Shown here one piece after another: positions 23,770 to 63,631 of a stretch of 64,000 bases of DNA (position 1 is its first letter; each line of letters opens with the position of its first letter). A program made the position numbers and the translations under genes. Under the pieces are notes generated by a model, which made no database searches, had not been told where the DNA came from, and worked only from the letters and a program-made list of their open reading frames with translations. The DNA lies in IMG/VR virus record IMGVR_UViG_3300030041_000009, positions 62,001 to 126,000 of that record; one strand, 5' to 3'.

Positions 23770-25332
23770 TTATAATTTGACCTTTAATTCATCATAAGGA
23801 TATTGTTGTTTTTTATATACTTCATCTCTTCTAGATTCATATTGTTTCCATAATATTGTTTTATAGTCAGGATGAAAAATGTCTACCAAATCAAATACGA
23901 TTAATTTTGTTTTTTCTTTGTGTAATCTTAGACCTCTCCCTATTGCTTGCCTTATTATTTTAGGCTCTTTATAAGAATCCGCAAAGATAATATTTGTTAT
24001 TGCTTTAACACTTACGCCGACAGAAAATACTCCGAAAGATGCTAAAAGTATTTTAGGATTACCTGAAGTATCTTCTAATTTTTTCTTGATATATTCTCTT
24101 TTTTCTGTAGATGTTGTACCGTCAATATAGAACACATCTTTACCAATGCAATTATCTTTGATATAATTATATAATTCTGTTCCATAAGTAATAGTATGAA
24201 ATAATATAAGAGAATTAGATTTAAATTTATCTGTTAAATTTTTAATAAATGTTTTTCTTTTTGCTGAATTATGTACGTATTCACGTTCTAAAATCCATGC
24301 ACGTTGACCGTCAGTTTTTTTTATATTATTAACTCCTTCTGCAAATTTATGATTATCATGATGTAACATGATAACTTTTATTTTAAGATCTGATATTAAT
24401 CCTTTATCTATTAATTTTCTAGCACTAATATTTATTAATTTAGGACCCATTAAAGATTGAATTGTTAATATTTCTATTGAAGAATCCGAAGGATAAGATC
24501 CACTCATTCCGAATCGTAATTTTGCAACTCCAAACGTTTTTGTTAAAATAGTTTGAATGGTAATAGCTTTTGCAGTATGTGCTTCATCACATGCTACAAC
24601 TTCAAATTGGTCAAAAAATGTTTTAGGATATTTTTCTAATGATTGATAAGTTCCAATGTATATATTTGGTATTTTTTCACCATCTCTATATTTTCTTGGT
24701 TTATCACTCATAACTTCATCAATTCTAATATCAATAGGGTTTTTATTATCATTATTAAAACCGTAATTATAATCATTAAGATCATTATAAAATTGAGTAA
24801 CTAAACTTATACTTGGGACAATCAATAAAAATTTAGCATTTGTATTTATATTTTTTAAATAATAAAATAGTAATGTGCCAAATACCAATGATTTACCTCC
24901 AGCAGTAGCAATTTCAATTAATCCATATTGATGTTTTAATAATTGAAATATTGCATCTACTTGATGTTCATATGGCATAAAAGGTTTACCATCAGGAGTT
25001 TTATGATCTTTATAAAATTCAGTCACAAAATCTTGTACATTTTCTCTTAATATATCTTTATTACGTGGAAATTGTTCTTGATTTTCAATTATAAATTTAT
25101 AACCATACTCTTTACAACATTTATATATTTCTTGCCATAATCCAAAGTCAATTGATCCACCTGGATTTCCAAAATAACTTATACTTCCATCCCATACACC
25201 AAGCTTGAACCTTTTCATAAAACGGTAGTTATGAACTTTTCTGGTTAGATATAGTTTAAGTTGGTTATATTCTCCTTTGGTTGATTCTGTTAAAATTAAC
25301 TTTGAATTGTCTTTATTTAATTTAAATTTCAT
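23770..25332 (-). CDS. uvsW: UvsW-like SF2 DNA helicase
   Basis: WDG.I N-domain, ATAGGKS, DEAH, SGS, QAIGRGLR; next to uvsY. Confidence 0.88.
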   Translation of the reverse strand: MKFKLNKDNSKLILTESTKGEYNQLKLYLTRKVHNYRFMKRFKLGVWDGSISYFGNPGGSIDFGLWQEIYKCCKEYGYKFIIENQEQFPRNKDILRENVQDFVTEFYKDHKTPDGKPFMPYEHQVDAIFQLLKHQYGLIEIATAGGKSLVFGTLLFYYLKNINTNAKFLLIVPSISLVTQFYNDLNDYNYGFNNDNKNPIDIRIDEVMSDKPRKYRDGEKIPNIYIGTYQSLEKYPKTFFDQFEVVACDEAHTAKAITIQTILTKTFGVAKLRFGMSGSYPSDSSIEILTIQSLMGPKLINISARKLIDKGLISDLKIKVIMLHHDNHKFAEGVNNIKKTDGQRAWILEREYVHNSAKRKTFIKNLTDKFKSNSLILFHTITYGTELYNYIKDNCIGKDVFYIDGTTSTEKREYIKKKLEDTSGNPKILLASFGVFSVGVSVKAITNIIFADSYKEPKIIRQAIGRGLRLHKEKTKLIVFDLVDIFHPDYKTILWKQYESRRDEVYKKQQYPYDELKVKL

Positions 25333-25495
25333 GTAATGCCTTTAATTTTTCTTTTCTTAAAATTTTATTTGCTTTATCGTAATATGATTTAAAATTATTT
25401 TTATTTTTAATAAAAAAATCTTTTTTACAATAATACTTTGGAGTAAATCCTAAGTAGTTTATTAATAATTTATATGCTAAATTATTTAGTTCCAT
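25322..25495 (-). CDS. 57-aa RKxKL-tagged protein, tandem paralog of 25482..25664 (not in ORF track)
   Basis: MELNNLAYKLL...KSYYDKANKILRKEKLKALHEI. Confidence 0.7.
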   Translation of the reverse strand: MELNNLAYKLLINYLGFTPKYYCKKDFFIKNKNNFKSYYDKANKILRKEKLKALHEI

Positions 25496-25664
25496 ATGAT
25501 TTTAATGTCTTTAATTTTTCTTTTCTTAGAATTTTATTTGCTTTATCGTAATATGATTTATATCTATTTTTATTTTTCATAAAAATATTAATTTTAAAAT
25601 CCTGAATTGAAATAAATCCAAATTTTTCTATAAATAATTTATATGCCAAATCATCTAATTTCAT
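25482..25664 (-). CDS. Small RKxKL-tagged protein
   Basis: ...KSYYDKANKILRKEKLKTL. Confidence 0.65.
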   Translation of the reverse strand: MKLDDLAYKLFIEKFGFISIQDFKINIFMKNKNRYKSYYDKANKILRKEKLKTLKSYGTK

Positions 25665-25884
25665 TTAATAAAAATAATTTCTTTTTTCTAATTTGTTTTA
25701 AACAAACAATATTTATATGGTTTTTAATAGTATTATCTAATAAATCAAATGATAGTTTGTCAGAATTATAAATATATTTTGAGTCATCGAAATGTATTAT
25801 TGTAATTTTTGGGCTATTCATTCCTTCTGCTATTATAAAATCTGATTTTATTTCAAATTTTTTAATATAATTATTAGTTATCAT
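25651..25884 (-). CDS. Small RKxKL-tagged protein
   Basis: Ends IRKKKLFLLNEIR. Confidence 0.55.
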   Translation of the reverse strand: MITNNYIKKFEIKSDFIIAEGMNSPKITIIHFDDSKYIYNSDKLSFDLLDNTIKNHINIVCLKQIRKKKLFLLNEIR

Positions 25885-26342
25885 TATTTGTAACCTCCTA
25901 ATATATTAGCCAGTTCAATTTTAGATTTAACTGAATAGTTTATAGATTCTAGATTTTTAGAAGTATCTCTTAAAAAATTTACATGTTCATCTAGTTCATT
26001 TATAAAGCATTGATGTTCTGATAAATCTGCTTCGATAAGTCTTAATTTTTCTGTTCCAGACGTTTTAACTTGATATGATGTTGCATAGAATTCAAATCTT
26101 TCTTTTGTTAGAACTTTTGTTTTTTGAACCAGTTTATGTATTTTAACGCTATAATTTTTAATTTCTTCGACTACAATTTGTCGTTGACTTATAGCTTCTG
26201 CCTGAATATCTGCAATATTTTTTAGATCGTCGTTAATTAATCTATTAGTTAATTTATTAACAATAGCGATCCATTGTTTTGTAGATTCTATCATTTTTTT
26301 TTGAAATTTTTGTCTTGAGTCTAGTTCAATGTTTTCTGACAT
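25884..26342 (-). CDS. uvsY: UvsY-like recombination mediator
   Basis: Helical, about 150 aa; RFEFY...IEADL...FL....K.L....Y.VK..IE; adjacent to uvsW as in T4-like phages. Confidence 0.65.
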   Translation of the reverse strand: MSENIELDSRQKFQKKMIESTKQWIAIVNKLTNRLINDDLKNIADIQAEAISQRQIVVEEIKNYSVKIHKLVQKTKVLTKERFEFYATSYQVKTSGTEKLRLIEADLSEHQCFINELDEHVNFLRDTSKNLESINYSVKSKIELANILGGYK

Positions 26343-26389
26343 AGTTGTAGAATGAGTTTATTTTATATATAATATAAATAGAAGTTAGT

Positions 26390-27139: not shown

Positions 27140-27532
27140 TTATATATTAAATTTATTTACATCAAATTCGAAATCAGGTATATTTATATTTCCCATAAAT
27201 TTATATCCTTTTTTTTCATAAAAATCTTCAGTATTTTTATTCCAATTAACTTTATAGTTCCAGCCCCAACAAAGACTAACATCGTCATCTACAGTTTTAG
27301 TTGGATTATATCCAACAAATACATAATTATATTGTCTCATATTTTTATTACCTAAAAATTGTTCTATTTTAAAATCAGGACATTTTATTTGTTTTAAAGA
27401 ATCTTCAAATCTATCATCAGTTGGTAATAACCAATAGCATCTACTATCATATATATTTTCATATATATTTTCATATATATTTTCATATATATTTTCATAT
27501 ATATTTTCTTCAAACATTTTTATATATTTCAT
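27140..27532 (-). CDS. CTS-like/FNI-tagged protein with YENI repeat (probable start 27532)
   Basis: MKYIKMFE..YWLLPTDDRFE..KFNI; paralog of 27537. Confidence 0.65.
   Translation of the reverse strand: MKYIKMFEENIYENIYENIYENIYENIYDSRCYWLLPTDDRFEDSLKQIKCPDFKIEQFLGNKNMRQYNYVFVGYNPTKTVDDDVSLCWGWNYKVNWNKNTEDFYEKKGYKFMGNINIPDFEFDVNKFNI
27447..27506. repeat. 12-bp tandem repeat tcatatatattt x5
   Basis: Five perfect copies encoding ENIY repeats. Confidence 0.95.
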
Positions 27533-27536
27533 ATAG

Positions 27537-27854
27537 TTATATGTTAAATTTATCAGCAATTAATTCTAATTCATTCATATTTATATGTCCACCAAATTTA
27601 TAATTATTTTCTTCAAGATAATCGTCAAGTAATTTACCTTTATATGAATTCCATTCCCATTGTTTATTATATGGTGAATAACAAATGAATACATATTTAA
27701 TATTTTTAATTCTATTATTATTTAAAAAAAATTTAATATTATTATTAGGACATTTTATTTGTTTTAAAGATTTTTCAAATCTATCATCAGTCGGCAATAA
27801 CCAATATGTTGGTTCATTATATAATTCATTTTCAAAAGTTTTAATATATTTCAT
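27537..27854 (-). CDS. CTS-like/FNI-tagged protein
   Basis: MKYIKTFE..YWLLPTDDRFE..KFNI. Confidence 0.65.
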   Translation of the reverse strand: MKYIKTFENELYNEPTYWLLPTDDRFEKSLKQIKCPNNNIKFFLNNNRIKNIKYVFICYSPYNKQWEWNSYKGKLLDDYLEENNYKFGGHINMNELELIADKFNI

Positions 27855-34587: not shown

Positions 34588-35370
34588 TTATATATTAAAT
34601 TTATTAACATTTATTGCCACATCTTCAGCATTTTTGAAATATTTTTTTAGTTCTTTTGGTACCCCGTATTGAGCTAACATTATATCTTTATCTAATGAAT
34701 CTTTAATTATATCAAAAAATCCTTCGTCTTTAGATTTTAATCTTTTGTAAAAATTTTTTATATGTTCAATAATAGGATAATATTTTATCATTAGATTATA
34801 ATTACATTCTTTTGTATCTCTCACCATGTTTTTACCATGCATATCGTGATCTCCTGATGTTCCTCCTATAAAATATTGAAATTCTCCATATTTATTTTCA
34901 AGAACTCCACCAAGTCTTTTTATAAGTATTGTCATAGCATACATCCTTTCATATCTTACAGTTATATTAGTATTAATATTTCTAGATTTATAATAACCTT
35001 TATCATCTTTTTCATTATTATAAAAATCAATTTGTTCTTGATTGATATAATCACGAACTCCTTTATTTTTATAAAGTTTATTTAATTTTGCATATGTTGG
35101 AGTCATTAATTTTGCCATATCATCTGATATGTATAATATATCTCCACTTAAATAAAAAGGTTGTTGTTTAATAATATTAATATTTTCAGATAAATAATTC
35201 ATTTTTTTATGTCTTTCAGGTATTGATTCGCCTTCTTTCCATATATCATTAATATTTCCACAATTTGGACATTTAACTATTTTGGTCATAGGTAACCAGC
35301 CTATCCATCCACATTCAAGACAATGATATTCAACTTCTAATTTTGTTTCAAAATATTTTAAGTATTTCAT
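34588..35370 (-). CDS. CTS-like/FNI-tagged protein with N-terminal Zn ribbon
   Basis: MKYLKYFE, CLECG..CPNCG, ends KFNI. Confidence 0.6.
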   Translation of the reverse strand: MKYLKYFETKLEVEYHCLECGWIGWLPMTKIVKCPNCGNINDIWKEGESIPERHKKMNYLSENINIIKQQPFYLSGDILYISDDMAKLMTPTYAKLNKLYKNKGVRDYINQEQIDFYNNEKDDKGYYKSRNINTNITVRYERMYAMTILIKRLGGVLENKYGEFQYFIGGTSGDHDMHGKNMVRDTKECNYNLMIKYYPIIEHIKNFYKRLKSKDEGFFDIIKDSLDKDIMLAQYGVPKELKKYFKNAEDVAINVNKFNI

Positions 35371-35714
35371 AAATTAAATTGTTTAGATTTTGATATTTCA
35401 GGATGCTCTTTATCTAACCATTTTTTATATTCAATTAGATTATTATAAGGTAATTTAGTGTTATAGCAACGTAATTCAGTCATAGTTTCTGGTAATATAG
35501 GTAACTCAGATAAATTATGATTATGAGAACATTTTAAATGTTTCAAATTAGGAGGTAATTTTTTAATTTTAGTTAAAAAATTATTATTACAATATAAAGT
35601 AATTAAACTATCTGGTAATTCAGGTAATTCAGTTAAATTATCTCCAGAGCAATCAATAGTAGTTATATTATTGATTCCTTTTGATATTGATTCAAATGTT
35701 TTAATATATTTCAT
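35367..35714 (-). CDS. CTS-like/FNL-tagged leucine-rich-repeat protein
   Basis: LTELPELPDSLITLYCNNN / LSELPILP bacterial-type LRRs; ends QFNL. Confidence 0.75.
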   Translation of the reverse strand: MKYIKTFESISKGINNITTIDCSGDNLTELPELPDSLITLYCNNNFLTKIKKLPPNLKHLKCSHNHNLSELPILPETMTELRCYNTKLPYNNLIEYKKWLDKEHPEISKSKQFNL

Positions 35715-43074: not shown

Positions 43075-43437
43075 TTATTCATCTTTATCTTCTAATATTC
43101 TTATTTTTAATTCCCTTAATAATTTATTCCAATATGGTTTAACGTCATCATAGTGTATATCTTTTATTATTTTATTAATATCATTTACTATATCATAAAA
43201 ATTATTAGAATATGTATTTCCAGCTATTGGATAAATAACTTCAATATTATTATCTCCTGTTTGTATCGGTAAATACAGTTCACGTATAGTATAATTTTCT
43301 TTTAATTCTTCATCTGATGATAAATTACCAGATTCAATATAACTCATTATCATCTCTTCTGCTTGCTGTCTTGTTAACCCTGATATATTTATTTTATATA
43401 CTATTATTATTAGTTCATTTTTCATTCGATATTTCAT
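43075..43437 (-). CDS. Hypothetical protein with RxxK[IL]-type tail
   Basis: Ends LLRELKIRILE. Confidence 0.55.
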   Translation of the reverse strand: MKYRMKNELIIIVYKINISGLTRQQAEEMIMSYIESGNLSSDEELKENYTIRELYLPIQTGDNNIEVIYPIAGNTYSNNFYDIVNDINKIIKDIHYDDVKPYWNKLLRELKIRILEDKDE

Positions 43438-43603
43438 TTAATTTTTCTAATTTATCTTTTCTTGTGACCGTATCAACAATTAAAATAGTTTGACCATCTC
43501 CAGTCGAAATCTTTTCTATTATAGATTTACAATCTTTTAATTCTCTATTTATATCATTAATTTTTTGCTTAGCATCATATCCTATATAAATTGCTTTTAA
43601 CAT
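43415..43603 (-). CDS. Small RKxKL-tagged protein, paralog of 43613
   Basis: RELK.CKSI..STG..LIVD..RKDKLEKLNE. Confidence 0.65.
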   Translation of the reverse strand: MLKAIYIGYDAKQKINDINRELKDCKSIIEKISTGDGQTILIVDTVTRKDKLEKLNEISNEK

Positions 43604-43612: not shown

Positions 43613-43804
43613 TTATTTTTTATTTGATATTTCATTTAATTTTTCTAATTTTTCTTTTCTTGAAAAAATATCAACTATTAAAACTGTTCCATATCCAGTT
43701 GACATTTCTTTAATTATAGATTTGCATTCTTTTAACTCTCTATTTAATTCTTCCAGATCACTTTGTTTTCCATAATCTCCTCTTACAAATATTGCTTTTA
43801 TCAT
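43613..43804 (-). CDS. Small RKxKL-tagged protein
   Basis: RKEKLEKLNE. Confidence 0.65.
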   Translation of the reverse strand: MIKAIFVRGDYGKQSDLEELNRELKECKSIIKEMSTGYGTVLIVDIFSRKEKLEKLNEISNKK

Positions 43805-49074: not shown

Positions 49075-49521
49075 ATGAATATGTTAAATAAAATAATAAA
49101 AAATATTTTAAAAATATTTAAGAATTTTTATTACTTTTTATATACTCCTATGAAATTGTATGATACCTATCATGCATTAGATATTTTAGTTGTATATTTA
49201 GAAAATGTTAAAATTATTAATATTGAAATTATAATAGGTAATTGTGTAATAACTTTCTCTGATAATTCAGTATTAACTTTTTGGAATTCTAGATGGAATG
49301 CTTGGATGGCTTATGGAACAATGAAATTTAGTAATGGAAGAATAATGAAATGGAATAAAAAACAACCATCTTGTGAAGTTTATTATAAATATAAAAAATT
49401 AATTCTAAATCATGAAAAATCTAAAAATCATAAAATAGATAATGTAGAAATTGAAGATTTTTCTGATTGCTTACCTATTAAATTACTTAGAAAACAAAAA
49501 TTAAAAAATATTAAAAAATAA
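49075..49521 (+). CDS. RKxKL-tagged protein, intact paralog of the tnpB-split gene
   Basis: LDIL.VYLENVKI...RW..WM..G.M.F.NG..W...PS.EV.YKYKKLIL...CLPIKL.RK.KLKNIKK. Confidence 0.7.
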   Translation: MNMLNKIIKNILKIFKNFYYFLYTPMKLYDTYHALDILVVYLENVKIINIEIIIGNCVITFSDNSVLTFWNSRWNAWMAYGTMKFSNGRIMKWNKKQPSCEVYYKYKKLILNHEKSKNHKIDNVEIEDFSDCLPIKLLRKQKLKNIKK

Positions 49522-49782
49522 TGAATAAGTTATTAAAAAAAATATATTACGGGTTTTTATGGCATAATCATATAAAATATGATTATTATCCTTTGTTAGA
49601 TATTTTACTTGTATATTTAGAAAATGTTAAAATTTCATCTATTAATGTAGATAATTATTATGCTACAATATTATTTTATGATAATTCAATATTAAAATTT
49701 TTGATTTGTGATGATAATATTCATTTTACTGTTAAAGATTATAATAGATGGTATATATGGATGAGCAAAGGTGAAATGTCAT
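49521..49782 (+). pseudogene. 5' half of gene split by the solo tnpB element
   Basis: Matches the N-half of 49075; stop codon created by the insertion. Confidence 0.85.
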
Positions 49783-51591
49783 AGTTAATAGCTATCAGTT
49801 TTAATATAATATATAAACTTTTATGATAAAAACTGATATAATAATTTTATTATATAGTACAAATATACTATTAAATTTTGATTCTACCAAATAAACGATT
49901 TAAATAAATGTTAACTATTAAATTAAAAATAAAAGAGTGCTTACAAGCAGAGATAATAGATCAATATTGTTCTGACTACACTGGTTTGTTTTATACTCTT
50001 TATAATCATTTTGATTTAATTGATGATGATTATATAAAATCACTATTAAATAATTCTGTGTTAGACAAATCCATGTTTGATTGTTGTATTTCTGATGTGA
50101 AAACAAAACTTAAACAGCACGAAGCAACCAAAGAAAAGAAATCAAAAAAGATAATTGATATTCAGAAATGTCTTGATAATAACGAATTCAAAACAAAAAA
50201 GGAAAAACGTAAAAAATATAATTTAATAAATAATCTAGCAAGAATTAAACGAAATATAAACAATAATATTACATTTGGTGGTAAAGCACTACAACGTGAA
50301 ATCACGAAATTACATTTAAATATTTATAAAACTGAGCTACAGCTAACAAAGATTGATATTAAATCAACAGATTACAAGAAATTTCTTGAATATAAGAAAG
50401 AATTAATAGAAAGGTTAGGGCTCAAGAAATTAGAGTTCACATCAAAACGTAAATTAGGAATTTATTTAATCGGACGTGCCTGTGAAAAAGGTAACAGAAA
50501 AATTGATTTCGATCTAATTAATAATAAAATCACTTTCAAACCATCAAGAGATTTTAAAATTGATATCACTTTTAAAACTAACGGCAAAAAACAAAAAAAT
50601 AAATTAATTAAAATTCAAGAAATGTCTAACCTGAATTTAATGCCAGTGACCATAAGATTATCAAACGAATATATTCATTTATCTTATGACGAAGAGTTAT
50701 TAAATGGTTATGAATTCAATCAATTGGACTGCAAGAAAGAACAGTTACTTGCGTTAAGCAAAGAAAGTAAAAAGGAAATTTATATAAAGCATAAGAATGA
50801 ACAAAATGATAGAAAAAAAGTAGGTAAGCTATCAAATCGTTACATGGCGGTTGATTTAAATCCAAAGTTTATCGGTTTAAGTATATTTGATGACATTAAT
50901 GATGAGCAGAAATTAATTCATGTTCAGTGCTTTATTTTATCTGAGTTAAGTACGAAATTAAGTTTAAGCTCTTCAGACAAGAAACAAGTTAAACAAAATG
51001 ATAAAAGAAAACATGAAATAAAAGAAGTCTGGAAACAAATATTCATGATGTGTAAGCACTTCAGAGTGTATAATTTTGTGATGGAAGATCTTGATTTTAA
51101 AGATAAACAATCAAAAGATACAGTAGGTAAAGAGTTAAATAAACAAACTAAAAATCTATGGCATCGAACTTTAACGACCAACTTGATTACTAAATATTGT
51201 AATGAAAATGGCTTAAATAAAATAGAGGTAAACGCTGCTTATAGTAGTTTTATCGGAAATATGATACATACCTTCTTTGACCCAATTTCATCTAGCATTG
51301 AAATTGGCAGTAGAGGGATGAATAAATTTAAAAAAGGTAGTTCTATATACCCGTGTATGAATTTAATAAATCAAGAGAAATTGTTTTATCTACTTGGTGA
51401 GAATATCAACACAACACAGGATAATTGGATTCAATTATATAGAAAGACCAACCAACTGAAGTATCGGAACATGTTATTAAAAGATGATGTGTTAATAGAC
51501 TATCACTTAGGAAATTGTAAAAGTAAAGTTAGAATTGTTACCCAACAAATCTAATAAAATACTACAAATTACTATATTTTAGTTACCTCAT
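49783..51591 (+). mobile_element. Non-autonomous tnpB-only element (IS200/IS605/IS1341- or IS607-derived), 1809 bp
   Basis: TCAT at both junctions (49779-82, 51588-91); removal restores the ORF; subterminal inverted repeat 49793-49802 / 49829-49838. Confidence 0.85.
49908..51554 (+). CDS. tnpB: TnpB RNA-guided nuclease (large, lacks Zn finger)
   Basis: MAVDLNP, VMEDL, VNAAYSSFIG..DP; homologous to 16643. Confidence 0.85.
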   Translation: MLTIKLKIKECLQAEIIDQYCSDYTGLFYTLYNHFDLIDDDYIKSLLNNSVLDKSMFDCCISDVKTKLKQHEATKEKKSKKIIDIQKCLDNNEFKTKKEKRKKYNLINNLARIKRNINNNITFGGKALQREITKLHLNIYKTELQLTKIDIKSTDYKKFLEYKKELIERLGLKKLEFTSKRKLGIYLIGRACEKGNRKIDFDLINNKITFKPSRDFKIDITFKTNGKKQKNKLIKIQEMSNLNLMPVTIRLSNEYIHLSYDEELLNGYEFNQLDCKKEQLLALSKESKKEIYIKHKNEQNDRKKVGKLSNRYMAVDLNPKFIGLSIFDDINDEQKLIHVQCFILSELSTKLSLSSSDKKQVKQNDKRKHEIKEVWKQIFMMCKHFRVYNFVMEDLDFKDKQSKDTVGKELNKQTKNLWHRTLTTNLITKYCNENGLNKIEVNAAYSSFIGNMIHTFFDPISSSIEIGSRGMNKFKKGSSIYPCMNLINQEKLFYLLGENINTTQDNWIQLYRKTNQLKYRNMLLKDDVLIDYHLGNCKSKVRIVTQQI

Positions 51592-51785
51592 TTCATAATG
51601 GTAATACAATTGATTGGAGAAACGATTCTCCATCACGTGAAGTATTATATAAATACAAAAAACTTATTTTGAAGTATGAAAAAGATGAAATAATAAGAAA
51701 AAAAGAAGCTGATATGTTGAAATATAATAATTGTTTACCAATTAAATTAGTTAGAAAAGAAAAATTAAAAAATATTAAAAAATAA
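51592..51785 (+). pseudogene. 3' half of gene split by the tnpB element
   Basis: Encodes FHNGNTIDWRNDSPSREVLYKYKKLIL...CLPIKLVRKEKLKNIKK. Confidence 0.85.
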
Positions 51786-51790: not shown

Positions 51791-52306
51791 ATGGGTTTAG
51801 ATATATCATATTATAGTAAAATTAAAATATCAGAAAGTAATGACGATGATGACGATAATTATATTGAAAATCATAAATATTTCATATATCAATTAGGTTC
51901 ATTAAAAAATGGTCAATGTTATCATGAAACAGATGAATCTGAAAGTGACTCTTTTCATGTTGGATCATGTTCAGGTTATGGTGTTTGGAGAAAGAATTTA
52001 TTAGAAATGCTAGGATATATTAGTATGCAAGATGTATTTAATGATTTTGATACAAATATTAGAAAAATTAAATTAGATGAAATTAATTCAGGAGAAAAAT
52101 ATGTAGCTAAATCTTTTTATGAAATTATAATATTCAGTGATTGTGAAGGCGTTATAGGACCTGAAATATCAAAAAAACTATATGAAGATTTTGTTGAATT
52201 TGATAAAGTAGCAATTAGTCAAGGAGATTATTTTTATGATATTTATTCTAAATTTAAAGAAGCATTTAGAGTAGCATCAGATAATGGACTTGTTTGTTTT
52301 AGTTAA
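51791..52306 (+). CDS. Conserved phage hypothetical protein
   Basis: MGLDI..GS.SGY..WR..FSDCEGVIG...KKLY.DF. Confidence 0.6.
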   Translation: MGLDISYYSKIKISESNDDDDDNYIENHKYFIYQLGSLKNGQCYHETDESESDSFHVGSCSGYGVWRKNLLEMLGYISMQDVFNDFDTNIRKIKLDEINSGEKYVAKSFYEIIIFSDCEGVIGPEISKKLYEDFVEFDKVAISQGDYFYDIYSKFKEAFRVASDNGLVCFS

Positions 52307-52837: not shown

Positions 52838-53143
52838 TCATATCAAATTTTTTAATTTTAATTTTCTAAATATTTTTATATGATATTCAATTATAAATTT
52901 TTTAAAATCTTCAAAATTAAAAAATTCTTTTGTATAGACTTTAATTTCATTTGTTATTTGGTAGTACCTATTAAATGAAATTATTTTATCCCAATCATTT
53001 ATTATATAAAAATTTATATTAATATAGCCATCTTGTTCAAATAGCATGAAATTATTTGTTTTATTTTTATAGCCTATAGATTCAATTAATTTTATGCATT
53101 TTTCATCATAATATTCTCTATATTTAAAATCAATCATATTCAA
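52838..53143 (-). CDS. Small RKxKL-tagged protein
   Basis: Ends FRKLKLKNLI. Confidence 0.55.
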   Translation of the reverse strand: MNMIDFKYREYYDEKCIKLIESIGYKNKTNNFMLFEQDGYININFYIINDWDKIISFNRYYQITNEIKVYTKEFFNFEDFKKFIIEYHIKIFRKLKLKNLI

Positions 53144-54317: not shown

Positions 54318-54857
54318 TTAAATATTGACATTTTTTAATGATATTAATTTTAATTTTCTTTGATCAATTCTAATTCTATCATTAAGATTTATGATAGTTT
54401 TTTCATAATCAATTCCTTCTTTTCTTCTGTAAAAAATTCCAGTTAGTTCATCTCGTCCTGATTTTTTATTTGTTAACTCTTTATAGAAAAAAATTTCTCT
54501 TGACTTAAAGAATTCTAATTTACGACAACCTTTTGTACTCATTATATCATCAACTACTAATTTACCATCAATATAAAATTTATTAATATTAAATTGAGTT
54601 GGACTAAATTCACTAGTAACATTATATTTTATCATAGCAGGACCATACAAATTATGAAGTTTACCATGATTTAAGTAGTACTCATAGTCATCAAATAATA
54701 TATGAGTAATATCCTTCAAATTGAATTCAATGTACTCATATAAAGAATAAAATGACTCAAAATCTTTTTTATATAATCTACCTGTTACGGAATCTATAGA
54801 TAAAAAAGAATCAAAATCAATCTTACATTCAACATCTAAAAATTTATACATTATCAT
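54318..54857 (-). CDS. Protein with LH..GPA motif and RKxKL tail
   Basis: GKLHNLYGPAMI; QRKLKLISL. Confidence 0.55.
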   Translation of the reverse strand: MIMYKFLDVECKIDFDSFLSIDSVTGRLYKKDFESFYSLYEYIEFNLKDITHILFDDYEYYLNHGKLHNLYGPAMIKYNVTSEFSPTQFNINKFYIDGKLVVDDIMSTKGCRKLEFFKSREIFFYKELTNKKSGRDELTGIFYRRKEGIDYEKTIINLNDRIRIDQRKLKLISLKNVNI

Positions 54858-55122
54858 TTAATAACTTATTTAATTTATATTTTCTTGCATCTTGATTATC
54901 TCCAAAATATTCATAAAAATAAAAATAAACACTATATTCATCATATTCATCATCTAATGAAAATGATATTTCACTAATTTTATCATTAAGTATAATTGTA
55001 ATAACACTATCATATATATGAGTTAATTTATAATATTTTCCTTTTTCTAATTCAGGAAAATTATTAAGAGTTGTATTTAATGTCTTTTTACAAAAATATA
55101 ATTCATTAATCTTAGGATGCAT
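54844..55122 (-). CDS. Distant member of the array family
   Basis: YFCKK...KGKYYK...FYEYFG...RKYKLNKL. Confidence 0.65.
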   Translation of the reverse strand: MHPKINELYFCKKTLNTTLNNFPELEKGKYYKLTHIYDSVITIILNDKISEISFSLDDEYDEYSVYFYFYEYFGDNQDARKYKLNKLLNDNV

Positions 55123-55366
55123 TTAATAACTTATTTAATTTTTCTTTTCTTTCTTCTTTAATAGTTCCAAAATATTCATAAAAATACAAATAACTCATAT
55201 GATTCTCTAATGAGAACACCATTTCACCAATATTAGAAATTATAACTACGTCACCATGATGACGATCTGAAACTTTATAATGTTTTCCTTTTTCAAAATA
55301 GTCATTATTAAATAAAAATTTCATTGCTTTCTTGCAATAATAATATTCATTAATCTTTGGACGCAT
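55112..55366 (-). CDS. Distant member of the array family
   Basis: YYCKK...KGKHYK...FYEYFG..ERKEKLNKL. Confidence 0.65.
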   Translation of the reverse strand: MRPKINEYYYCKKAMKFLFNNDYFEKGKHYKVSDRHHGDVVIISNIGEMVFSLENHMSYLYFYEYFGTIKEERKEKLNKLLNAS

Positions 55367-55723: not shown

Positions 55724-56008
55724 CTAACATTCTTTAATTATTTTTTCTAATTTATTTTTTCTAAATTCTTTTAAATCACAAAAATATGTATCAAAATCAT
55801 AATCTTCCATTCTTGGGGTGAACCAAAATGAATACCAACCATCACCATCACAACCATAACCATCATTAGTGTATTTTATTACAATAATATTATTATAATC
55901 TTTTTTCTCGTAAATAAAATATGAATAATTTTTTTTAAAAATCAATAGTTTATCAAACTCTCTGTAACAGTCCTTTATGCAAAAAACTTTATCGCCAACT
56001 TTATACAT
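55724..56008 (-). CDS. Distant member of the array family
   Basis: KVGDKVFCIKD...YF..KEFRKNKLEKI. Confidence 0.65.
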   Translation of the reverse strand: MYKVGDKVFCIKDCYREFDKLLIFKKNYSYFIYEKKDYNNIIVIKYTNDGYGCDGDGWYSFWFTPRMEDYDFDTYFCDLKEFRKNKLEKIIKEC

Positions 56009-56324
56009 TATTAATTATATTTTCTAATTTTTTCTTTCTTTTATTCTTAATCCAATCAGTTCTATTAAACTCAAATACAGATGGTATAATACTATGATCA
56101 TAATCAGTCATGATAATGTTACAATTTATTAAATCTAACCAACAATATGATATTCCTTTTTCTACATATCCATAAAATCCAGATATATATTTATTTGGTA
56201 TCTTAGGTATTTCAGATTCTGCTATTATTCTAAATTCATTTATTTTATTTGTAGGCTCAATATCTAAATTGAAACTAAAATAAATAAATTTACAATCATA
56301 AAACCATTCTTCTATCTCTTTCAT
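56001..56324 (-). CDS. Small RKxKL-tagged protein
   Basis: Ends KRKKKLENII. Confidence 0.55.
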   Translation of the reverse strand: MKEIEEWFYDCKFIYFSFNLDIEPTNKINEFRIIAESEIPKIPNKYISGFYGYVEKGISYCWLDLINCNIIMTDYDHSIIPSVFEFNRTDWIKNKRKKKLENIINNV

Positions 56325-59418: not shown

Positions 59419-59729
59419 TGAAGGATATTAAGACTATTAAAAGATCTAAAAAGAAGGTTATTCCAGTGAATGAAAGGACTTATATTGGATTTGATGTTAT
59501 AGAATTTAAGAGTGGTGGTAAATGTTACAGATTAAAATATGAATAGATGAAAGAAAAATTTAAAAAATACATATAATACGGAATAAAATGATTATATTTG
59601 ATATTGAATGGAAAATTGAATACAGTTGGAGTCAGAGTTTCTAATTTCGGTGAAAAACAATGAAATTAGTTTAGAATTACTTTACATTAGCAACAGTTCA
59701 TGATAGAAAAATAAAATTAGAACCACTTT

Positions 59730-59996
59730 ATGGATAAACAGAATATTAATATTGGAGATAAATTATTATGCAAAAATAGTTATTATAATTATACTGAAGT
59801 TTTTTATAAAGATAGAGAATATGAAATAGTTAATACTAACATATTTTATAGTAGTAATTTTTATTCATTAAAAGAAAAAAATAGCAAAAATTTATTATAT
59901 CTACGTAAAGTTGATTTTTATGATGTTTTTTATACTAAACAAGAAGAAAGAAAAATAAAATTAAACAAATTAAAAAATGACGAAAAAGAATATTAA
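59730..59996 (+). CDS. Array paralog 1
   Basis: QN.N.GDKLLCK ... FYTKQEERKIKL. Confidence 0.8.
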   Translation: MDKQNINIGDKLLCKNSYYNYTEVFYKDREYEIVNTNIFYSSNFYSLKEKNSKNLLYLRKVDFYDVFYTKQEERKIKLNKLKNDEKEY

Positions 59997-60300
59997 TTTA
60001 GGAGATAAGTTATTATGTAAAAAAGATTTATTTCAAAATTTAATTAGTGATGATAAATTAATAATATTTTCTCATTTTATAAAAGATAAATATTATTCTA
60101 TTGTTGATATAAAAATAATAGATGATAAATATGCTTATAAGAATACATGTGATCATATATTTGGACAAGATGATTATATTTATTATATAAATGGAGAAAT
60201 GAATAAATCATGTTCATTTTGGTCTGAAAGTTTTTTTCATGATTATTTTTATGAAAAAAAAGAATTAAGAAATAAGAAATTGCAGAAAATAAATGGATAA
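59977..60300 (+). CDS. Array paralog 2
   Basis: Same terminal motifs. Confidence 0.8.
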   Translation: MTKKNINLGDKLLCKKDLFQNLISDDKLIIFSHFIKDKYYSIVDIKIIDDKYAYKNTCDHIFGQDDYIYYINGEMNKSCSFWSESFFHDYFYEKKELRNKKLQKING

Positions 60301-60586
60301 ACAGAATCTTAATATTGGAGATAAATTATTATGCAAAAATGATTTAAAATCATTGGTATCTAATAATACTTCATTATTATTTTTTAAAAAAGGTAAATAT
60401 TATGTTGTTGATGAAATTAGATTAATTAATGATATTTTTGTGGATTATAATGAATATTTTTATTATATAATTGATGATAATAATGAACGATATTCATTTT
60501 GGATGGAAAGATATTTATATACTTATTTTTATACTAAAAATGAAATTAGAAGCATGAAATTAAATGAAATAAATGAAGGATCATAA
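60293..60586 (+). CDS. Array paralog 3
   Basis: Same terminal motifs. Confidence 0.8.
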   Translation: MDKQNLNIGDKLLCKNDLKSLVSNNTSLLFFKKGKYYVVDEIRLINDIFVDYNEYFYYIIDDNNERYSFWMERYLYTYFYTKNEIRSMKLNEINEGS

Positions 60587-60842
60587 TTTTAAAGTAGGAG
60601 ATAAATTATTATGCAAAAAAGATTATATTCATCATAAGATATCTATTCATAAAGGGAACGAATATATTATAAGTGATAGTTTATTTGAGACTGAATATTA
60701 TACTTTTATTTATATAATTGATGATAATAATGTAAAGGTAGAAGTTCAGTATGAAAAAGATATTTATGAATTTTTTTACACTGAGAAGGAAGTTAGGAAT
60801 ATTAAATTAAAAAAGTTGGGTAATGAAGGAACAGAATCTTAA
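60573..60842 (+). CDS. Array paralog 4
   Basis: Same terminal motifs. Confidence 0.8.
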   Translation: MKDHNFKVGDKLLCKKDYIHHKISIHKGNEYIISDSLFETEYYTFIYIIDDNNVKVEVQYEKDIYEFFYTEKEVRNIKLKKLGNEGTES

Positions 60843-61110
60843 TATAGGAGATGAATTAATATGTAAACGTATATTTCATCCAAATTTTGAATATTATATA
60901 CTAAATTCATGTTATACTGTTTATGATATTAAATTTTTTAATATTGATAATAAATTTTTTAATATTGATAATGCATATTATTATATGACCATAGGAAATG
61001 AAAAAATGAATATTGTTTGTTCATATGAAGATATTTATACTTATTTTTACACAAAAAACGAAACTAGAAAAATTAAATTACAAAAACTTCATGAAGAATC
61101 AAAATTTTAA
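60823..61110 (+). CDS. Array paralog 5
   Basis: Same terminal motifs. Confidence 0.8.
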   Translation: MKEQNLNIGDELICKRIFHPNFEYYILNSCYTVYDIKFFNIDNKFFNIDNAYYYMTIGNEKMNIVCSYEDIYTYFYTKNETRKIKLQKLHEESKF

Positions 61111-61375
61111 TATAGGAGATAAATTATTGTGTAAAATTGATGTTAATAAATCATATCTGACATTAACGAAAGGTGTAGAATATATAATTTTGAGTGCTGA
61201 CTTTGATGTACTTTTGAGTGCTGACATTGATGTACTTTATTATAAATATAATATAATAGATGATACCAATAAAGATTTCTATTATATAGAAGAATTTGAT
61301 GATTATTTTTATACTAAAAATGAAGTACGAAAAATTAAATTAGAAAAATTAAAAAATGAAGAAGCAGAATATTAA
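61091..61375 (+). CDS. Array paralog 6 (probable start 61091, MKNQNFNIG)
   Basis: Same terminal motifs. Confidence 0.8.
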   Translation: MKNQNFNIGDKLLCKIDVNKSYLTLTKGVEYIILSADFDVLLSADIDVLYYKYNIIDDTNKDFYYIEEFDDYFYTKNEVRKIKLEKLKNEEAEY

Positions 61376-61625
61376 TATTGGAGATAAGTTATTATGTAAG
61401 ATTAGTTTTTTATCAAATTCTACATATATTATAAAAGGTAAATATTATTATATTAAATATATTGATATTATTAATGTAGCTCGTAAAGATTATTATTTCT
61501 ATTATTTAGACGATTTCGAATCATTGGTATGTTGTGATGAAAAAGAATTTTGTAAATATTTTTATACTAAACAAGAAGAAAGAAAAATTAAATTAGAAAA
61601 ACTTTATGAAGAAGCAGAATATTAA
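61356..61625 (+). CDS. Array paralog 7
   Basis: Same terminal motifs. Confidence 0.8.
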   Translation: MKKQNINIGDKLLCKISFLSNSTYIIKGKYYYIKYIDIINVARKDYYFYYLDDFESLVCCDEKEFCKYFYTKQEERKIKLEKLYEEAEY

Positions 61626-61881
61626 TGTAGGAGATAAATTATTATGCAAAAAAAATCTTTTTAATTCAGAAAGTACATATCTTATTGAATTTGAATATTA
61701 TTATGTTTGTGAAATTACTCCAACTAATAATAATTATACTGATTATATTTATATGCTTATATGTGAACAATATCAACCTGTTAATTTTAGATATTACGGA
61801 GAATTTTGTGAATATTTTTATACTAAACAAGAAGAAAGAAAAATCAAATTAGAAAAACTTTATGAAGAATCAAAATCTTAA
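61606..61881 (+). CDS. Array paralog 8
   Basis: Same terminal motifs. Confidence 0.8.
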   Translation: MKKQNINVGDKLLCKKNLFNSESTYLIEFEYYYVCEITPTNNNYTDYIYMLICEQYQPVNFRYYGEFCEYFYTKQEERKIKLEKLYEESKS

Positions 61882-62137
61882 AGTAGGAGATAATTTATTA
61901 TGTAAATATAATATAATTAATATAAATAAAAATTTCAAAATAGACAAATATTATGCTATGATATCAATTTATATTATTTCTAATACTATAAGCGGTGTGG
62001 ATTTTTATTATTATTATTTATTTGATGATGATGATAATTTAATATTATTTTGTGGTGAAGAAGATTTATATGAATATTTTTATACTAAACAAGAAGAAAG
62101 AAAAAGAAAATTAGATAAAATAGAAAATTATGAATAA
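61862..62137 (+). CDS. Array paralog 9
   Basis: Same terminal motifs. Confidence 0.8.
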   Translation: MKNQNLKVGDNLLCKYNIININKNFKIDKYYAMISIYIISNTISGVDFYYYYLFDDDDNLILFCGEEDLYEYFYTKQEERKRKLDKIENYE

Positions 62138-62396
62138 TTTTAATGATGGTGATAAAATATTATGTAAAAAGGATTTAACTTATTATGGTAACCATATTAT
62201 AGAAGGTGATTATTATATTTTTCATGATAATATGTTTAGTGGTATTTTTAATGATTTTTACTGCTGTTATATAAGTGAATCTAATAATATATTTTCATAT
62301 TATTTAACTGAACATGATTTAGTTGGTCATTTTTTTATGAAAAATGAGATTAGAAAATTAAAATTAGAAAAACTTTATGAAGAAACAGAATATTAA
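62130..62396 (+). CDS. Array paralog 10
   Basis: Same motifs; MNNFN subtype. Confidence 0.8.
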   Translation: MNNFNDGDKILCKKDLTYYGNHIIEGDYYIFHDNMFSGIFNDFYCCYISESNNIFSYYLTEHDLVGHFFMKNEIRKLKLEKLYEETEY

Positions 62397-62628
62397 TGTA
62401 GGAGATAGATTATTATGTAAAGAGGAGATTGATAAAATATTTATTAAAGATAAATATTATTATGTAGATGATATTAAAAATTTTTCAACTGATTATAGTG
62501 AATATTTTTATGATTTAAGATCAGAATTCAATACAATATTACCATTTTTTAGTGAATCATATTTACATCAGTATTTTTATACTAAACAAGAAGAAAGAAA
62601 AATCAAATTAGAAAAACTTTATGAATAA
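62377..62628 (+). CDS. Array paralog 11
   Basis: Same terminal motifs. Confidence 0.8.
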   Translation: MKKQNINVGDRLLCKEEIDKIFIKDKYYYVDDIKNFSTDYSEYFYDLRSEFNTILPFFSESYLHQYFYTKQEERKIKLEKLYE

Positions 62629-62887
62629 TTTTAATGAAGGTGATAAAATATTATGTAAAAAAGATTTAATAGCTAATTATAGTACACATTTTATAGAATG
62701 TAAATATTATATTTATCATAAAATTCTGAATGATTCATTTAAAGGTTTTGCCTGCTGTATATTTAATGAATCTAATGGAATATATCCATATTTTTTAAAT
62801 AAAAATGAATTACTAAATCATTTTTATACTAAACAAGAAGAGAGAAAAATTAAATTAGAAAAACTTTATGAAGAATCAGAATCTTAA
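62621..62887 (+). CDS. Array paralog 12
   Basis: Same motifs; MNNFN subtype, core similar to paralog 10. Confidence 0.8.
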   Translation: MNNFNEGDKILCKKDLIANYSTHFIECKYYIYHKILNDSFKGFACCIFNESNGIYPYFLNKNELLNHFYTKQEERKIKLEKLYEESES

Positions 62888-63140
62888 TGTAGGTGATAAG
62901 TTATTGTGTAAAAAAAATTTAAATGAATTATATGCAAGTTTTAATAAAAATAAATATTATATTGTTTATGATATTAAATTATTTGACAATAATACTGATT
63001 ATTGTTATTATATAGAATTTGATAAAAAAAAATATTATTCTTTTAGATATAGCGTTAGATTTTTTTATGAACATTTTTATACTAAACAAGAGGAGAGAAA
63101 AATAAAATTAGAAAAACTTTATGAAGAAACAGGATATTAA
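62868..63140 (+). CDS. Array paralog 13
   Basis: Same terminal motifs. Confidence 0.8.
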   Translation: MKNQNLNVGDKLLCKKNLNELYASFNKNKYYIVYDIKLFDNNTDYCYYIEFDKKKYYSFRYSVRFFYEHFYTKQEERKIKLEKLYEETGY

Positions 63141-63387
63141 TGATGAAGATAAATTATTATGTAAAAAAAATCTTCTAGTTGGAGCAAATAAATATTTATA
63201 TGTTGATAATTATTATATTGTTATGGTAGTATACGGTCCTTATGAATATTGTTATTATTTTAATGATGAAAATGATAGAATATTACCATTTTCATTTAGC
63301 ATAAAAGAGATGTCTGAACATTTTTATACTAAACAAGAAGAAAGAAAAATTAAATTAGAAAAAATTTATGAAGAATCAGAATCTTAA
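63121..63387 (+). CDS. Array paralog 14
   Basis: Same terminal motifs. Confidence 0.8.
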   Translation: MKKQDINDEDKLLCKKNLLVGANKYLYVDNYYIVMVVYGPYEYCYYFNDENDRILPFSFSIKEMSEHFYTKQEERKIKLEKIYEESES

Positions 63388-63631
63388 TGTAGGAGATAAG
63401 TTATTATGTAAAAAAGATTTAACAACATCATATTCAATATATCATAAAGATAGATATTATATTGTTCATTTTATTATTAATTATGATGATGATTATCAGT
63501 ATTTGATATCTGATGATAAAAATGCTTATTCATCTTTTAAACGTGATGAAGAATATTTATATACTTATTTTTATAGAAAAAATGAGATTAGAAAAATTAA
63601 ATTGAAAAAATTGAATAATATTTTTAATTAA
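63368..63631 (+). CDS. Array paralog 15
   Basis: Same terminal motifs. Confidence 0.8.
   Translation: MKNQNLNVGDKLLCKKDLTTSYSIYHKDRYYIVHFIINYDDDYQYLISDDKNAYSSFKRDEEYLYTYFYRKNEIRKIKLKKLNNIFN

What the first reader, a model, noticed from the sequence alone, without database searches (positions are those of the whole stretch)
25322..63631. Second, mutually exclusive tag: C-terminal R-K-x-K-L-x-x-[LI] on about 29 small proteins
Seen at or near the C-terminus of ORFs 25322, 25482, 25651, 43075 (variant), 43415, 43613, 49075, the split 49521/51785 gene, 52838, 54318, 54844, 55112, 55724, 56001 and all 15 array genes, whose bodies belong to several unrelated families. These lie among replication and host-promoter genes and lack CTS leaders. 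Inference A: a short basic amphipathic helix that docks diverse proteins onto one hub (membrane, nucleic acid or a phage protein). Inference B: partly an RNA signal, since it is A-rich and often sits just upstream of the next overlapping ATG, as in SD-less Bacteroidota initiation regions. Its presence in terminal genes (54318, 63368) favours A.
Basis: partly seen in the sequence, partly recalled or inferred. Interest (0 to 1): 0.7.

Follow-up and report, generated by a model that had tools for sequence, protein, structure and literature searches.

The report
Shared C-terminal peptide tag, megaphage proteins
About one gene in five of this peat-bog megaphage, across at least two unrelated protein folds, ends in the same short helix motif (R-K-x-K-L-x-x-L/I), which is conserved as a peptide rather than as an RNA signal and looks like a common docking label whose partner is still unknown.

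Summary
The window has 25 strict C-terminal RK.KL..[LI] motifs plus 4 variants, which makes 29 tagged genes. The whole 256-kb contig has about 97 tagged ORFs among about 470 genes. Shuffling each protein's last 30 residues gives 0.08 expected against 73 observed.

Selection acts on the peptide:
- Codon use at R, K, K and L equals genome-wide usage.
- Against a relative, synonymous divergence in the tag equals that of the bodies (22% vs 24%), while non-synonymous change drops from 43% to 10%.
- 22 of 24 tagged genes with no nearby downstream start keep the strict motif.

The tag lies in a confident C-terminal helix on an SH3-like barrel and on an all-alpha fold. Profile comparison aligns only the tag.

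It is confined to one clade of AT-rich megaphages and absent from more distant huge phages.

The link to the next gene's ATG is also real (0-15 nt after the motif in about 67 of 97), but it is secondary. The helix is not membrane-type amphipathic.

Best reading: a modular docking helix for one unidentified partner, spread by cassette recombination. No database family matches.

The parts
25322..25495 (-). Tagged gene, 57 aa, all-alpha body. Ends ...ILRKEKLKALHEI and overlaps the start of the UvsW-like helicase.
   Evidence: (AF2: three helices, tag in helix 36-55)
25482..25664 (-). Tagged paralogue, 60 aa. Ends ...RKEKLKTLKSYGTK.
25651..25884 (-). Tagged gene, 77 aa, different body. Ends ...RKKKLFLLNEIR. 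Orthologues in relatives keep the tag.
43075..43437 (-). Variant tag: 120 aa, ends ...LLRELKIRILEDKDE (K1 replaced by E).
   Evidence: weakest member
43415..43603 (-). Tagged gene, 62 aa. Ends ...RKDKLEKLNEISNEK.
43613..43804 (-). Tagged paralogue, 63 aa. Ends ...RKEKLEKLNEISNKK. No coupled downstream start.
49075..49521 (+). Tagged gene, 148 aa. Ends ...LLRKQKLKNIKK.
49521..49784 (+). N-terminal piece of a paralogue of 49075, broken by an insertion of about 1.8 kb.
   Evidence: aligns to residues 3-83 of the 49075 product
51558..51785 (+). C-terminal piece of the same broken paralogue, with an intact tag ...LVRKEKLKNIKK.
   Evidence: aligns to residues 84-148
52838..53143 (-). Tagged gene, about 99 aa. 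Ends ...FRKLKLKNLI.
54318..54857 (-). Tagged gene, 179 aa, last of its strand run. Ends ...QRKLKLISLKNVNI. No downstream gene.
54844..55122 (-). Tagged gene, 92 aa. Ends ...ARKYKLNKLLNDNV.
55112..55366 (-). Tagged gene, 84 aa. Ends ...ERKEKLNKLLNAS.
55724..56008 (-). Tagged SH3-like gene, 94 aa. Ends ...FRKNKLEKIIKEC. Not coupled to a downstream start.
56001..56324 (-). Tagged gene, 107 aa. Ends ...KRKKKLENIINNV.
59675..59737 (+). Relic of a tag with no ORF in front of it (NYFTLATVHDRKIKLEPLYG*, no ATG), just upstream of the first array gene.
59730..63631 (+). Tandem array of 15 overlapping SH3-like genes of 83-107 aa. Gene coordinates: 59730-59996, 59977-60300, 60293-60586, 60573-60842, 60823-61110, 61091-61375, 61356-61625, 61606-61881, 61862-62137, 62130-62396, 62377-62628, 62621-62887, 62868-63140, 63121-63387, 63368-63631. 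Twelve have the strict tag and three have variants.
   Evidence: AF2 pLDDT 84.7: barrel plus C-terminal helix 74-90; copy-number variant
52061..52084 (+). Internal copy of the motif (RKIKLDEI), 73 residues before the end of gene 51791-52306. Possibly a fusion or read-through of a formerly tagged gene.
   Evidence: not followed up

Best explanation
The motif is a modular C-terminal peptide element. Its core is hydrophobic-R-K-x-K-[LI]-x-[KE]-[LI]-[NK], followed by a free tail of 1-12 residues. It forms the end of an alpha-helix on small, soluble, slightly acidic accessory proteins of one megaphage clade.

Shown:
- It is selected as a peptide.
- It sits on at least two unrelated folds and dozens of sequence families.
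- It does not depend on a downstream gene.
- It is the most conserved part of otherwise fast-evolving proteins.

Inferred:
- The five conserved residues lie on one helix face, with two Leu flanked by Arg and Lys. They would dock all these proteins onto one common site, an acidic-rimmed hydrophobic groove of a phage or host protein. The variable bodies would supply different activities or targets.
- The element spreads and is reshuffled by recombination at gene junctions.
- Its Lys/Arg/Glu/Asn codons also give the A-rich, SD-less upstream region of the next overlapping gene.
For: Enrichment: 73 observed against 0.08 expected; 99 DNA-pattern matches against 16 controls.

Peptide-level selection:
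- Arg is AGA in 85% and CGN in 15% of tags. Leu is TTA in 68%, CTN in 24% and TTG in 8%. Lys is AAG in 7%. All equal genome-wide usage.
- Against relative G001, synonymous change among identical residues is 22% in the tag and 24% in the bodies. Non-synonymous change is 10% against 43%.
- Per-position identity is 0.98 at R0 and 1.0 at K3, against about 0.45 in the bodies and 0.2-0.4 in the tails.

Independence of a downstream ATG: 22 of 24 uncoupled genes keep the strict motif.

Different folds. The shared core outside the SH3-like families shrinks to positions -1 to +8.

Helix: pLDDT is about 90-95.

Clade-wide presence: G001 74 against 14 controls, G002 25/5, G003 23/9, G004 7/1. G001 has 81 tagged ORFs.

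Outside hits: 81 profile hits among 1.84 billion representatives, all 32-121 aa, with the match at or within a few residues of the C-terminus in all but one (P0088, where 33 residues follow).

Modularity: among relatives, homology upstream of the helicase starts exactly at the tag while the bodies differ.

Solubility: no hydrophobic run of 18 or more residues in any of the 97.
Against: No partner has been identified, and no experiment or expression data exist; no RNA run holds the locus.

About half of the tagged proteins are SH3-like relatives. Part of the spread is therefore common descent, and in those proteins the conserved block is longer (F-7 ... E-2), as for a structural element.

Whether the helix face is exposed or packed on the body could not be read from the models.

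The strong positional link to the next ATG shows that the coding sequence is not free of a second use.

The one complex prediction gave no verdict.
Confidence: 0.5

Rival explanations
1. There is no shared partner. The motif is the structural C-terminal helix of one huge, fast-diverging paralogue superfamily, with a few recombinant offshoots, and it is kept because it caps or stabilises small domains.
For: 46 of 97 bodies are SH3-like, with a longer conserved block. All 81 outside hits are of this type. Chromo-barrel and Sso7d-type SH3-like folds do carry a C-terminal capping helix (general knowledge; weak MSL3/MRG15 matches over 87-95 columns).
Against: The same R-K-x-K-L-x-x-L is invariant on an all-alpha fold and on bodies of 57-284 aa with no detectable similarity. 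A purely structural cap would not need the same Arg and Lys on unrelated surfaces. Arg is rare in this proteome, at 2.2%.
Confidence: 0.18
2. The conserved thing is mainly the nucleic acid. It would be an A-rich, SD-less initiation region for the overlapping downstream gene and/or a junction sequence used for cassette recombination, with the peptide as a by-product.
For: The next ATG lies 0-15 nt after the motif in about 67 of 97 cases. Tagged genes overlap the next gene by 8-25 nt. A is 63% upstream of tag-preceded starts and 53% upstream of the others. An ORF-less relic is kept before the first array gene. Homology breakpoints fall at the tag. A unit deletion occurs in another sample.
Against: Codon choice equals genome usage, and Arg and Leu are each encoded by codon families that differ at the first base. 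Synonymous divergence is not reduced. 22 of 24 uncoupled genes keep the strict motif. One relative has the helicase without any tag upstream. The other end-signature of this genome does show codon-level constraint (AAC 55% against 8%), so the test can detect it.
Confidence: 0.08
3. The helix binds nucleic acid, for example AT-rich phage or host DNA or RNA, and turns many small proteins into chromatin- or RNA-associated factors.
For: Net charge of the 8-mer is +3.3 on slightly acidic bodies. SH3-like-plus-helix small proteins such as Sso7d bind DNA (general knowledge). The tagged genes lie among helicase and replication genes.
Against: Only three basic residues are conserved, and two invariant Leu sit on the same face. 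Position +5 is Glu as often as Lys. No known nucleic-acid-binding family matched.
Confidence: 0.1
4. The partner is a specific machine. Either (a) the procapsid or scaffold interior, making the tag a C-terminal cargo-loading peptide that complements the N-terminal MKYIKxFE class, or (b) a host AAA+ protease or adaptor, making the tag a degron that times these proteins.
For: Two mutually exclusive end-signatures cover about a third of the genes. Basic C-terminal helices dock scaffolding proteins and cargo in P22, 80alpha/SaPI1 and encapsulins, and MuA's basic C-terminus is a ClpX signal (general knowledge).
Against: There are no virion or proteome data. No AAA+ or ClpP gene was found in the two large fragments (the fragments are 36-46% complete). 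The motif is not at the extreme C-terminus. About 100 cargo species per 256 kb would be unprecedented.
Confidence: 0.14

Closest known systems
Encapsulin cargo-loading peptides and microcompartment encapsulation peptides
   Same: A short terminal helix or peptide is appended to unrelated proteins through a poorly conserved linker and directs them all to one binding site.
   Different: The consensus differs (encapsulin GSLxIGSLK-like; microcompartment peptides are clearly amphipathic). A shell partner is known there and unknown here. Here about 20% of a phage's genes carry it. The comparison rests on general knowledge and was not tested.
T4-type capsid targeting sequence (CTS) of internal proteins
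   Same: A phage-encoded address peptide is shared by unrelated small proteins. This genome also has a T4-CTS-like N-terminal leader class (MKYIKxFE) that never co-occurs with the RK tag.
   Different: The CTS is N-terminal and is cut off at L/I-x-E by the prohead protease. The RK tag is C-terminal, and no cleavage motif is evident.
C-terminal coat-binding helices of scaffolding proteins (P22 gp8; 80alpha scaffold and its SaPI1 mimic CpmB)
   Same: A C-terminal helix with essential basic residues docks onto one site, and unrelated proteins can share it.
   Different: There it is one or two proteins per phage, not about a hundred. There is no sequence similarity, and no evidence that the tagged proteins are in virions.
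Docking short linear motifs with a basic cluster plus spaced hydrophobics (e.g. MAPK D-motifs), and effector motifs such as oomycete RxLR
   Same: The physical logic is the same (basic residues plus Leu on one face), and so is the genomic picture: large, fast-evolving small-protein repertoires that keep only a short motif.
   Different: Those are eukaryotic systems with different spacing and position. This is an analogy only.
Modular shuffling at conserved gene boundaries in T4-type hyperplastic regions (promoter-stem-loop cassettes)
   Same: Arrays of small accessory genes are exchanged at short conserved junctions. Breakpoints at the tag and unit-number variation are seen here.
   Different: There the junction is non-coding DNA or RNA. 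Here the conserved element is coding and is selected at the amino-acid level.

Membership tests
MinD/FtsA-type membrane-targeting amphipathic helix | High hydrophobic moment, with a hydrophobic face opposite a basic face | tested here: not met
   Mean hydrophobic moment is 0.18, below that of shuffles (0.36). Mean hydrophobicity is -0.51. The conserved Leu and Arg/Lys share one face.
SD-less A-rich translation initiation region (Bacteroidota type) | Conservation depends on a downstream start codon and acts on nucleotides | tested here: not met
   22 of 24 tagged genes without a nearby start keep the strict motif. Codon usage equals genome usage. Synonymous divergence is 22% against 24% in the bodies.
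SD-less A-rich translation initiation region (Bacteroidota type) | A-rich, G-poor stretch at about -25 to -1 of a start codon | tested here: met
   A is 63% upstream of tag-preceded starts. Other genes reach 58-66% A at -21 to -9, with G at or below 5-10%. The next ATG lies 0-15 nt after the motif in about 67 of 97 cases.
T4-type capsid targeting sequence | N-terminal leader of about 10 residues ending in a prohead-protease site (L/I-x-E) | tested here: not met
   The tag is C-terminal. None of the 97 tagged ORFs has the MKYIKxFE leader.
Terminal cargo-targeting peptides (encapsulin, microcompartment, scaffold type) | The same short terminal peptide on unrelated cargo proteins | tested here: met
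   65 body clusters; two folds; only the tag aligns.
Terminal cargo-targeting peptides (encapsulin, microcompartment, scaffold type) | Binding to a shell or capsid protein and presence inside the particle | not testable with these tools
   No virion proteome exists and no partner is known.
ClpX C-motif-2-like or other C-terminal degrons | Recognition by an AAA+ unfoldase, with the signal at the extreme C-terminus | tested here: inconclusive
   The motif sits 1-12 residues from the end, mode 4-6. No phage AAA+ or ClpP gene is present in the 256-kb and 330-kb fragments. The host is unknown.
Pfam DUF7026 or UVR-like helical motif | A match above the family's gathering score | tested here: not met
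   DUF7026 scores at best 15.8-18.7 bits against a cut-off of 28, in 2 of 18 array proteins. UVR was not reported.
SH3/Tudor/chromo-barrel fold (bodies of the array family only) | Five-stranded small barrel, optionally with a C-terminal helix | tested here: inconclusive
   The AF2 model (pLDDT 84.7) has four strands plus two helices. The best Foldseek PDB matches are SH3/Tudor/chromo domains, but with E >= 0.13. Atlas structural neighbours are SH3-bearing proteins.

The most novel reading that the evidence does not exclude
The phage runs a proteome-wide two-label sorting code. About a third of its genes carry one of two mutually exclusive end-signatures: the N-terminal MKYIKxFE leader with the C-terminal NKFN[IL] end, or the C-terminal RKxKLxx[LI] helix. 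The two labels would send small, fast-evolving accessory proteins to two different destinations, for example the capsid interior for injection and an intracellular hub or compartment. The RK tag would then be a new kind of viral address peptide.
Probability: 0.15. Interest if true: 0.9.

Novelty: new variant of a known kind. Interest (0 to 1): 0.68.

Why it matters
Megaphage genomes consist mostly of small ORFans with no handle on function. A peptide label shared by about 20% of the genes gives such a handle: one pull-down, or one structure-prediction screen with a 20-residue helix, could place about a hundred unknown proteins in one pathway.

If a common partner exists, it is probably a central node of host takeover or of virion or compartment assembly in an uncultured phage lineage. 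The tag would also be a portable targeting peptide.

The locus also shows how short coding modules at gene junctions can both carry function and mediate cassette turnover in tandem arrays.

Tried and rejected
- Family searches. Pfam, PHROGs and NCBIfam scans of 30-odd tagged proteins gave nothing above threshold. The only repeated hit, DUF7026, is sub-threshold.
- Solved structures. A PDB sequence search with profiles gave only non-significant hits. One is a curious resemblance to helix alpha5 of Ras proteins (E about 0.5). Another is 5gjl (E 3).
- Fold searches. Foldseek on the all-alpha model found no match. Atlas searches gave only unnamed viral clusters, and nothing for the tag alone.
- Complex prediction. 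The array protein paired with the 25322-family protein, as a test of tag-tag pairing, gave no verdict (score 0.13, mark 0.32). This counts neither for nor against binding.
- Programmed frameshift. I tested whether frameshifting on the A-runs could fuse neighbouring genes. The downstream frame is closed by a stop within or just after the tag in all but 2 of 73 pairs, so I rejected this.
- Promoters. The Bacteroidota promoter consensus TTTG-N18-22-TAnnTTTG is not enriched: 6 matches against 5 expected.
- RNA families. Rfam found none in the window.
- tRNAs. None found.
- Proteases. No phage AAA+ or ClpP gene was found in the two fragments.
- Loci search. The search for related loci with the array alignment failed, because no stretch was conserved enough.
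- Homologue search. A search with one SH3-type member found only 13 small metagenomic relatives. They have conserved ends and a variable middle.

Full report
**Context.** The window is bases 62001-126000 of a 256,033-bp IMG/VR viral contig with 22% G+C. CheckV rates it 36% complete, so the genome is probably about 0.7 Mb. Near-identical and 79-89% related contigs come from peat, soil and freshwater metagenomes. The only blastn matches in the phage collection are weak, to 460-735-kb uncultured huge phages. The window encodes a UvsW-like helicase, a DinG/XPD-like helicase, an OmpA-domain protein, a glycosyltransferase-like protein, a collagen-repeat protein and giant ORFs without matches. It has no tRNA or Rfam family. 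Translation starts lack a Shine-Dalgarno signal and have A-rich upstream regions.

- A six-frame scan for RK.KL..[LI] finds 28 hits in the window. 25 lie 1-7 residues before the stop of ORFs of 57-179 aa.
- Contig-wide there are 93 strict hits, about 87 of them C-terminal, and 97 tagged ORFs with a slightly relaxed pattern, out of about 470 genes.
- Shuffling the last 30 residues of every protein keeps each C-terminus's own Lys/Leu content. It gives 0.08 motifs on average (maximum 1) against 73 observed.
- A frame-blind degenerate DNA pattern gives 99 matches against 16 for its reversed control. Nearly all matches are the in-frame C-terminal ones.

**Anatomy.**
- The invariant core is R0-K1-x-K3-L4-x-x-[LI]7. 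A hydrophobic residue is preferred at -1, K or E at +5 and +6, and N or K at +8. A tail of 1-12 residues follows, with mode 4-6.
- In the SH3-like families the conserved block extends upstream (Y-F-[YI]-[TS]-x-[KQ]-E-x). In the other bodies it does not.
- AlphaFold2 puts the tag in a confident C-terminal helix in both families modelled. The array family is a small beta-barrel with a short helix and then helix 74-90 (pLDDT 84.7). The 25322 family is three helices with the tag in helix 36-55 (pLDDT 88.9).
- Fold search places the array body weakly among SH3/Tudor/chromo-barrel domains. The all-alpha body matches nothing.
- Profile-profile comparison of the two families aligns only the last 23 columns.
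- On a helical wheel R0, K1, K3, L4 and L7 fall within about 160 degrees, so they form one mixed basic and leucine face. As a result the hydrophobic moment is low (0.18 against 0.36 for shuffles) and the segment is strongly hydrophilic. This is not a membrane-type amphipathic helix.
- The proteins have no hydrophobic runs. Their bodies are slightly acidic and Tyr-rich. Arg is rare in the proteome, at about 2.2%.

**Peptide or RNA?** Four tests say peptide.
1. Synonymous codon use at the invariant residues equals genome-wide use. This includes Arg as CGN (15%) beside AGA, and Leu as CTN (24%) or TTG beside TTA.
2. In best-hit pairs with the 330-kb relative G001, synonymous differences among identical residues are 22% at the invariant tag positions and 24% in the bodies. 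Non-synonymous differences fall from 43% to 10%. Per-position identity peaks at R0 (0.98) and K3 (1.0), against about 0.45 in the bodies and 0.2-0.4 in the tails.
3. 24 tagged genes have no same-strand start within 30 nt, among them 54318 and 63368 in the window. 22 of them keep the strict motif, against 53 of 73 coupled genes.
4. As an internal control, the genome's other end-signature (see below) does show a strong codon-level anomaly. The test can therefore detect nucleotide constraint where it exists.

- The next gene's ATG begins 0-15 nt after the motif in about 67 of 97 cases, most often 2 nt after.
- Tagged genes overlap their successor by 8-25 nt, where untagged genes mostly overlap by 1-5 nt.
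- The frequent tail residues N/Y then E (xAT GAx) encode that ATG.
- The tag's codons make the upstream region 63% A, like or above the genome's generic initiation regions.
- An ORF-less relic of a tag sits in front of the first array gene. Its K-to-P change would break the helix.

I read this as dual use of a coding module, not as its reason for being. One relative has the helicase preceded by an ordinary intergenic region with no tag.

**Distribution and evolution.**
- The tag is enriched in all relatives sampled, whose helicases are 79-89% identical: 74/14, 25/5, 23/9 and 7/1 pattern matches against controls. G001 has 81 tagged ORFs.
- Three more distant huge phages of 635-735 kb show no enrichment (only a handful of weak profile hits).
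- An exact 30-nt version of the tag occurs in only 24 stretches of IMG/VR's 2.9 million contigs. All 24 are on large contigs, several of which are the related contigs found with the helicase.
- A profile of the 97 C-termini finds 81 cluster representatives among 1.84 billion proteins. All are 32-121 aa. The match lies at or within a few residues of the C-terminus in all but one (P0088, where 33 residues follow). All are of the SH3-like type, and some carry two tandem tags. Their contigs are short runs of overlapping small genes.
- Tagged proteins evolve fast. They are 29-77% identical to the best G001 hit, against 83% for the helicase. Homologues keep both ends and vary the middle.
- Between the conserved 152-aa gene and the helicase, relatives carry different numbers and kinds of small genes, most of which end in the tag. 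Nucleotide homology to the window begins exactly at the tag.
- In another metagenome, a 685-nt contig joins 62385 to 62877. This is a clean loss of two array units, 491 nt.
- The tag-plus-start junction is therefore also where cassettes are exchanged and arrays expand or contract.

**Mechanism.**
- Shown: a peptide-level, helix-forming, C-terminal module on unrelated small soluble proteins, specific to one clade.
- Inferred: its single conserved face (Leu-Leu flanked by Arg/Lys) docks these proteins onto one common acidic and hydrophobic site. The bodies supply diversity.
- I put about 0.5 on a common protein partner of any kind. This figure includes the sub-cases capsid or scaffold interior and protease or adaptor.
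- Tag-tag pairing could not be assessed, because the complex prediction gave no verdict.
- A frameshift-fusion idea was tested and rejected.

**Comparison with known systems.**
- No Pfam, PHROGs or NCBIfam family, and no significant PDB sequence match, was found for any tagged protein scanned or for the tag profile.
- In logic it resembles terminal targeting peptides: encapsulin cargo-loading peptides, microcompartment encapsulation peptides, the T4 capsid targeting sequence and scaffold C-terminal helices. It also resembles motif-bearing effector repertoires.
- It is not a member of any of these. Position, consensus and, where testable, defining properties differ (see the membership table).
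- I therefore rate it a new variant of a known kind. Its scale, about a fifth of the genes, is unusual.

**Limits.**
- There are no expression, proteomic or host data.
- Gene calls are my own ORF heuristics.
- The models give secondary structure and confidence only, not contacts.
- The contig is a fragment.

Noticed in passing
window 27140-27854, 34588-36309, 39381-39776, and 58 genes contig-wide: There is a second end-signature class. 58 genes end in ...[AT]-N-K-F-N-[IL]*, and 41 of them also start with MKY[IL]KxFE, which resembles the T4 capsid targeting sequence. None overlaps the RK tag. Many are joined by ATGA overlaps. The last Asn codon is AAC in 55% (8% genome-wide), and the last codon is always NTA. 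The junction therefore has nucleotide-level constraint. Several of these genes also have SH3-like 'VGDYV' bodies.
   Followed up: partly
window 49785-51590 (ORF 49908-51554, +): An insertion of about 1.8 kb splits a tagged paralogue exactly between the equivalents of residues 83 and 84. It carries a 548-aa ORF with no Pfam, PHROGs, NCBIfam or PDB match. By eye the ORF has D...E...-type motifs (AVDLNPKF, VMEDLDF, NAAYSSFIG) reminiscent of RuvC-like TnpB/Cas12 nucleases. This is an unverified lead for a mobile element in a megaphage.
   Followed up: partly
window 59675-59737: A relic 3' end of an array gene (NYFTLATVHDRKIKLEPLYG*), with no start codon, sits directly before the first array gene. 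Its Lys-to-Pro change would break the helix.
   Followed up: yes
window 62386-62876: A contig from a 2025 soil metagenome (run X8) lacks exactly two array units (491 nt), with the joint in the conserved gene start. Contigs of all runs are shattered across the array. Together these indicate copy-number polymorphism.
   Followed up: partly
L024-L031, about 1.3 kb upstream of the helicase (window 25322-25884): The stretch between a conserved 152-aa gene and the UvsW-like helicase holds 1-4 different small genes in different relatives. Most end in the tag. One relative (L030) has instead a 141-aa lipoprotein-like, cytochrome-c-motif (CxxCH) protein and no tag.
   Followed up: partly
window 51791-52306: A 171-aa gene has an internal RKIKLDEI, followed by a typical tail (NSGE) and 70 more residues. 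It may be a fusion of a tagged gene with its downstream neighbour.
   Followed up: no
proteins P0014, P0029, P0055, P0088 (metagenomic hits): Some relatives carry two tandem copies of the tag. P0088 has the tag followed by a CxxC...CxxC zinc-ribbon-like extension.
   Followed up: no
L041:18930-19592 (relative G001): A 221-aa tagged protein has a weak ResIII/P-loop N-terminal match (E 2e-4). It is the only tagged protein with any hint of an enzymatic domain.
   Followed up: no
window 1-6900: G+C rises to 30-34% (22% elsewhere) over a 2152-aa ORF without family matches. Next to it lies a collagen-repeat protein (6988-8346), so this is probably a fibre or structural region.
   Followed up: partly
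PDB search with the array profile: There is a non-significant (E about 0.5) but eye-catching resemblance between the SH3-family tag block (FYTKQEERKIKLEKLN) and the end of helix alpha5 of H-Ras and K-Ras.
   Followed up: no
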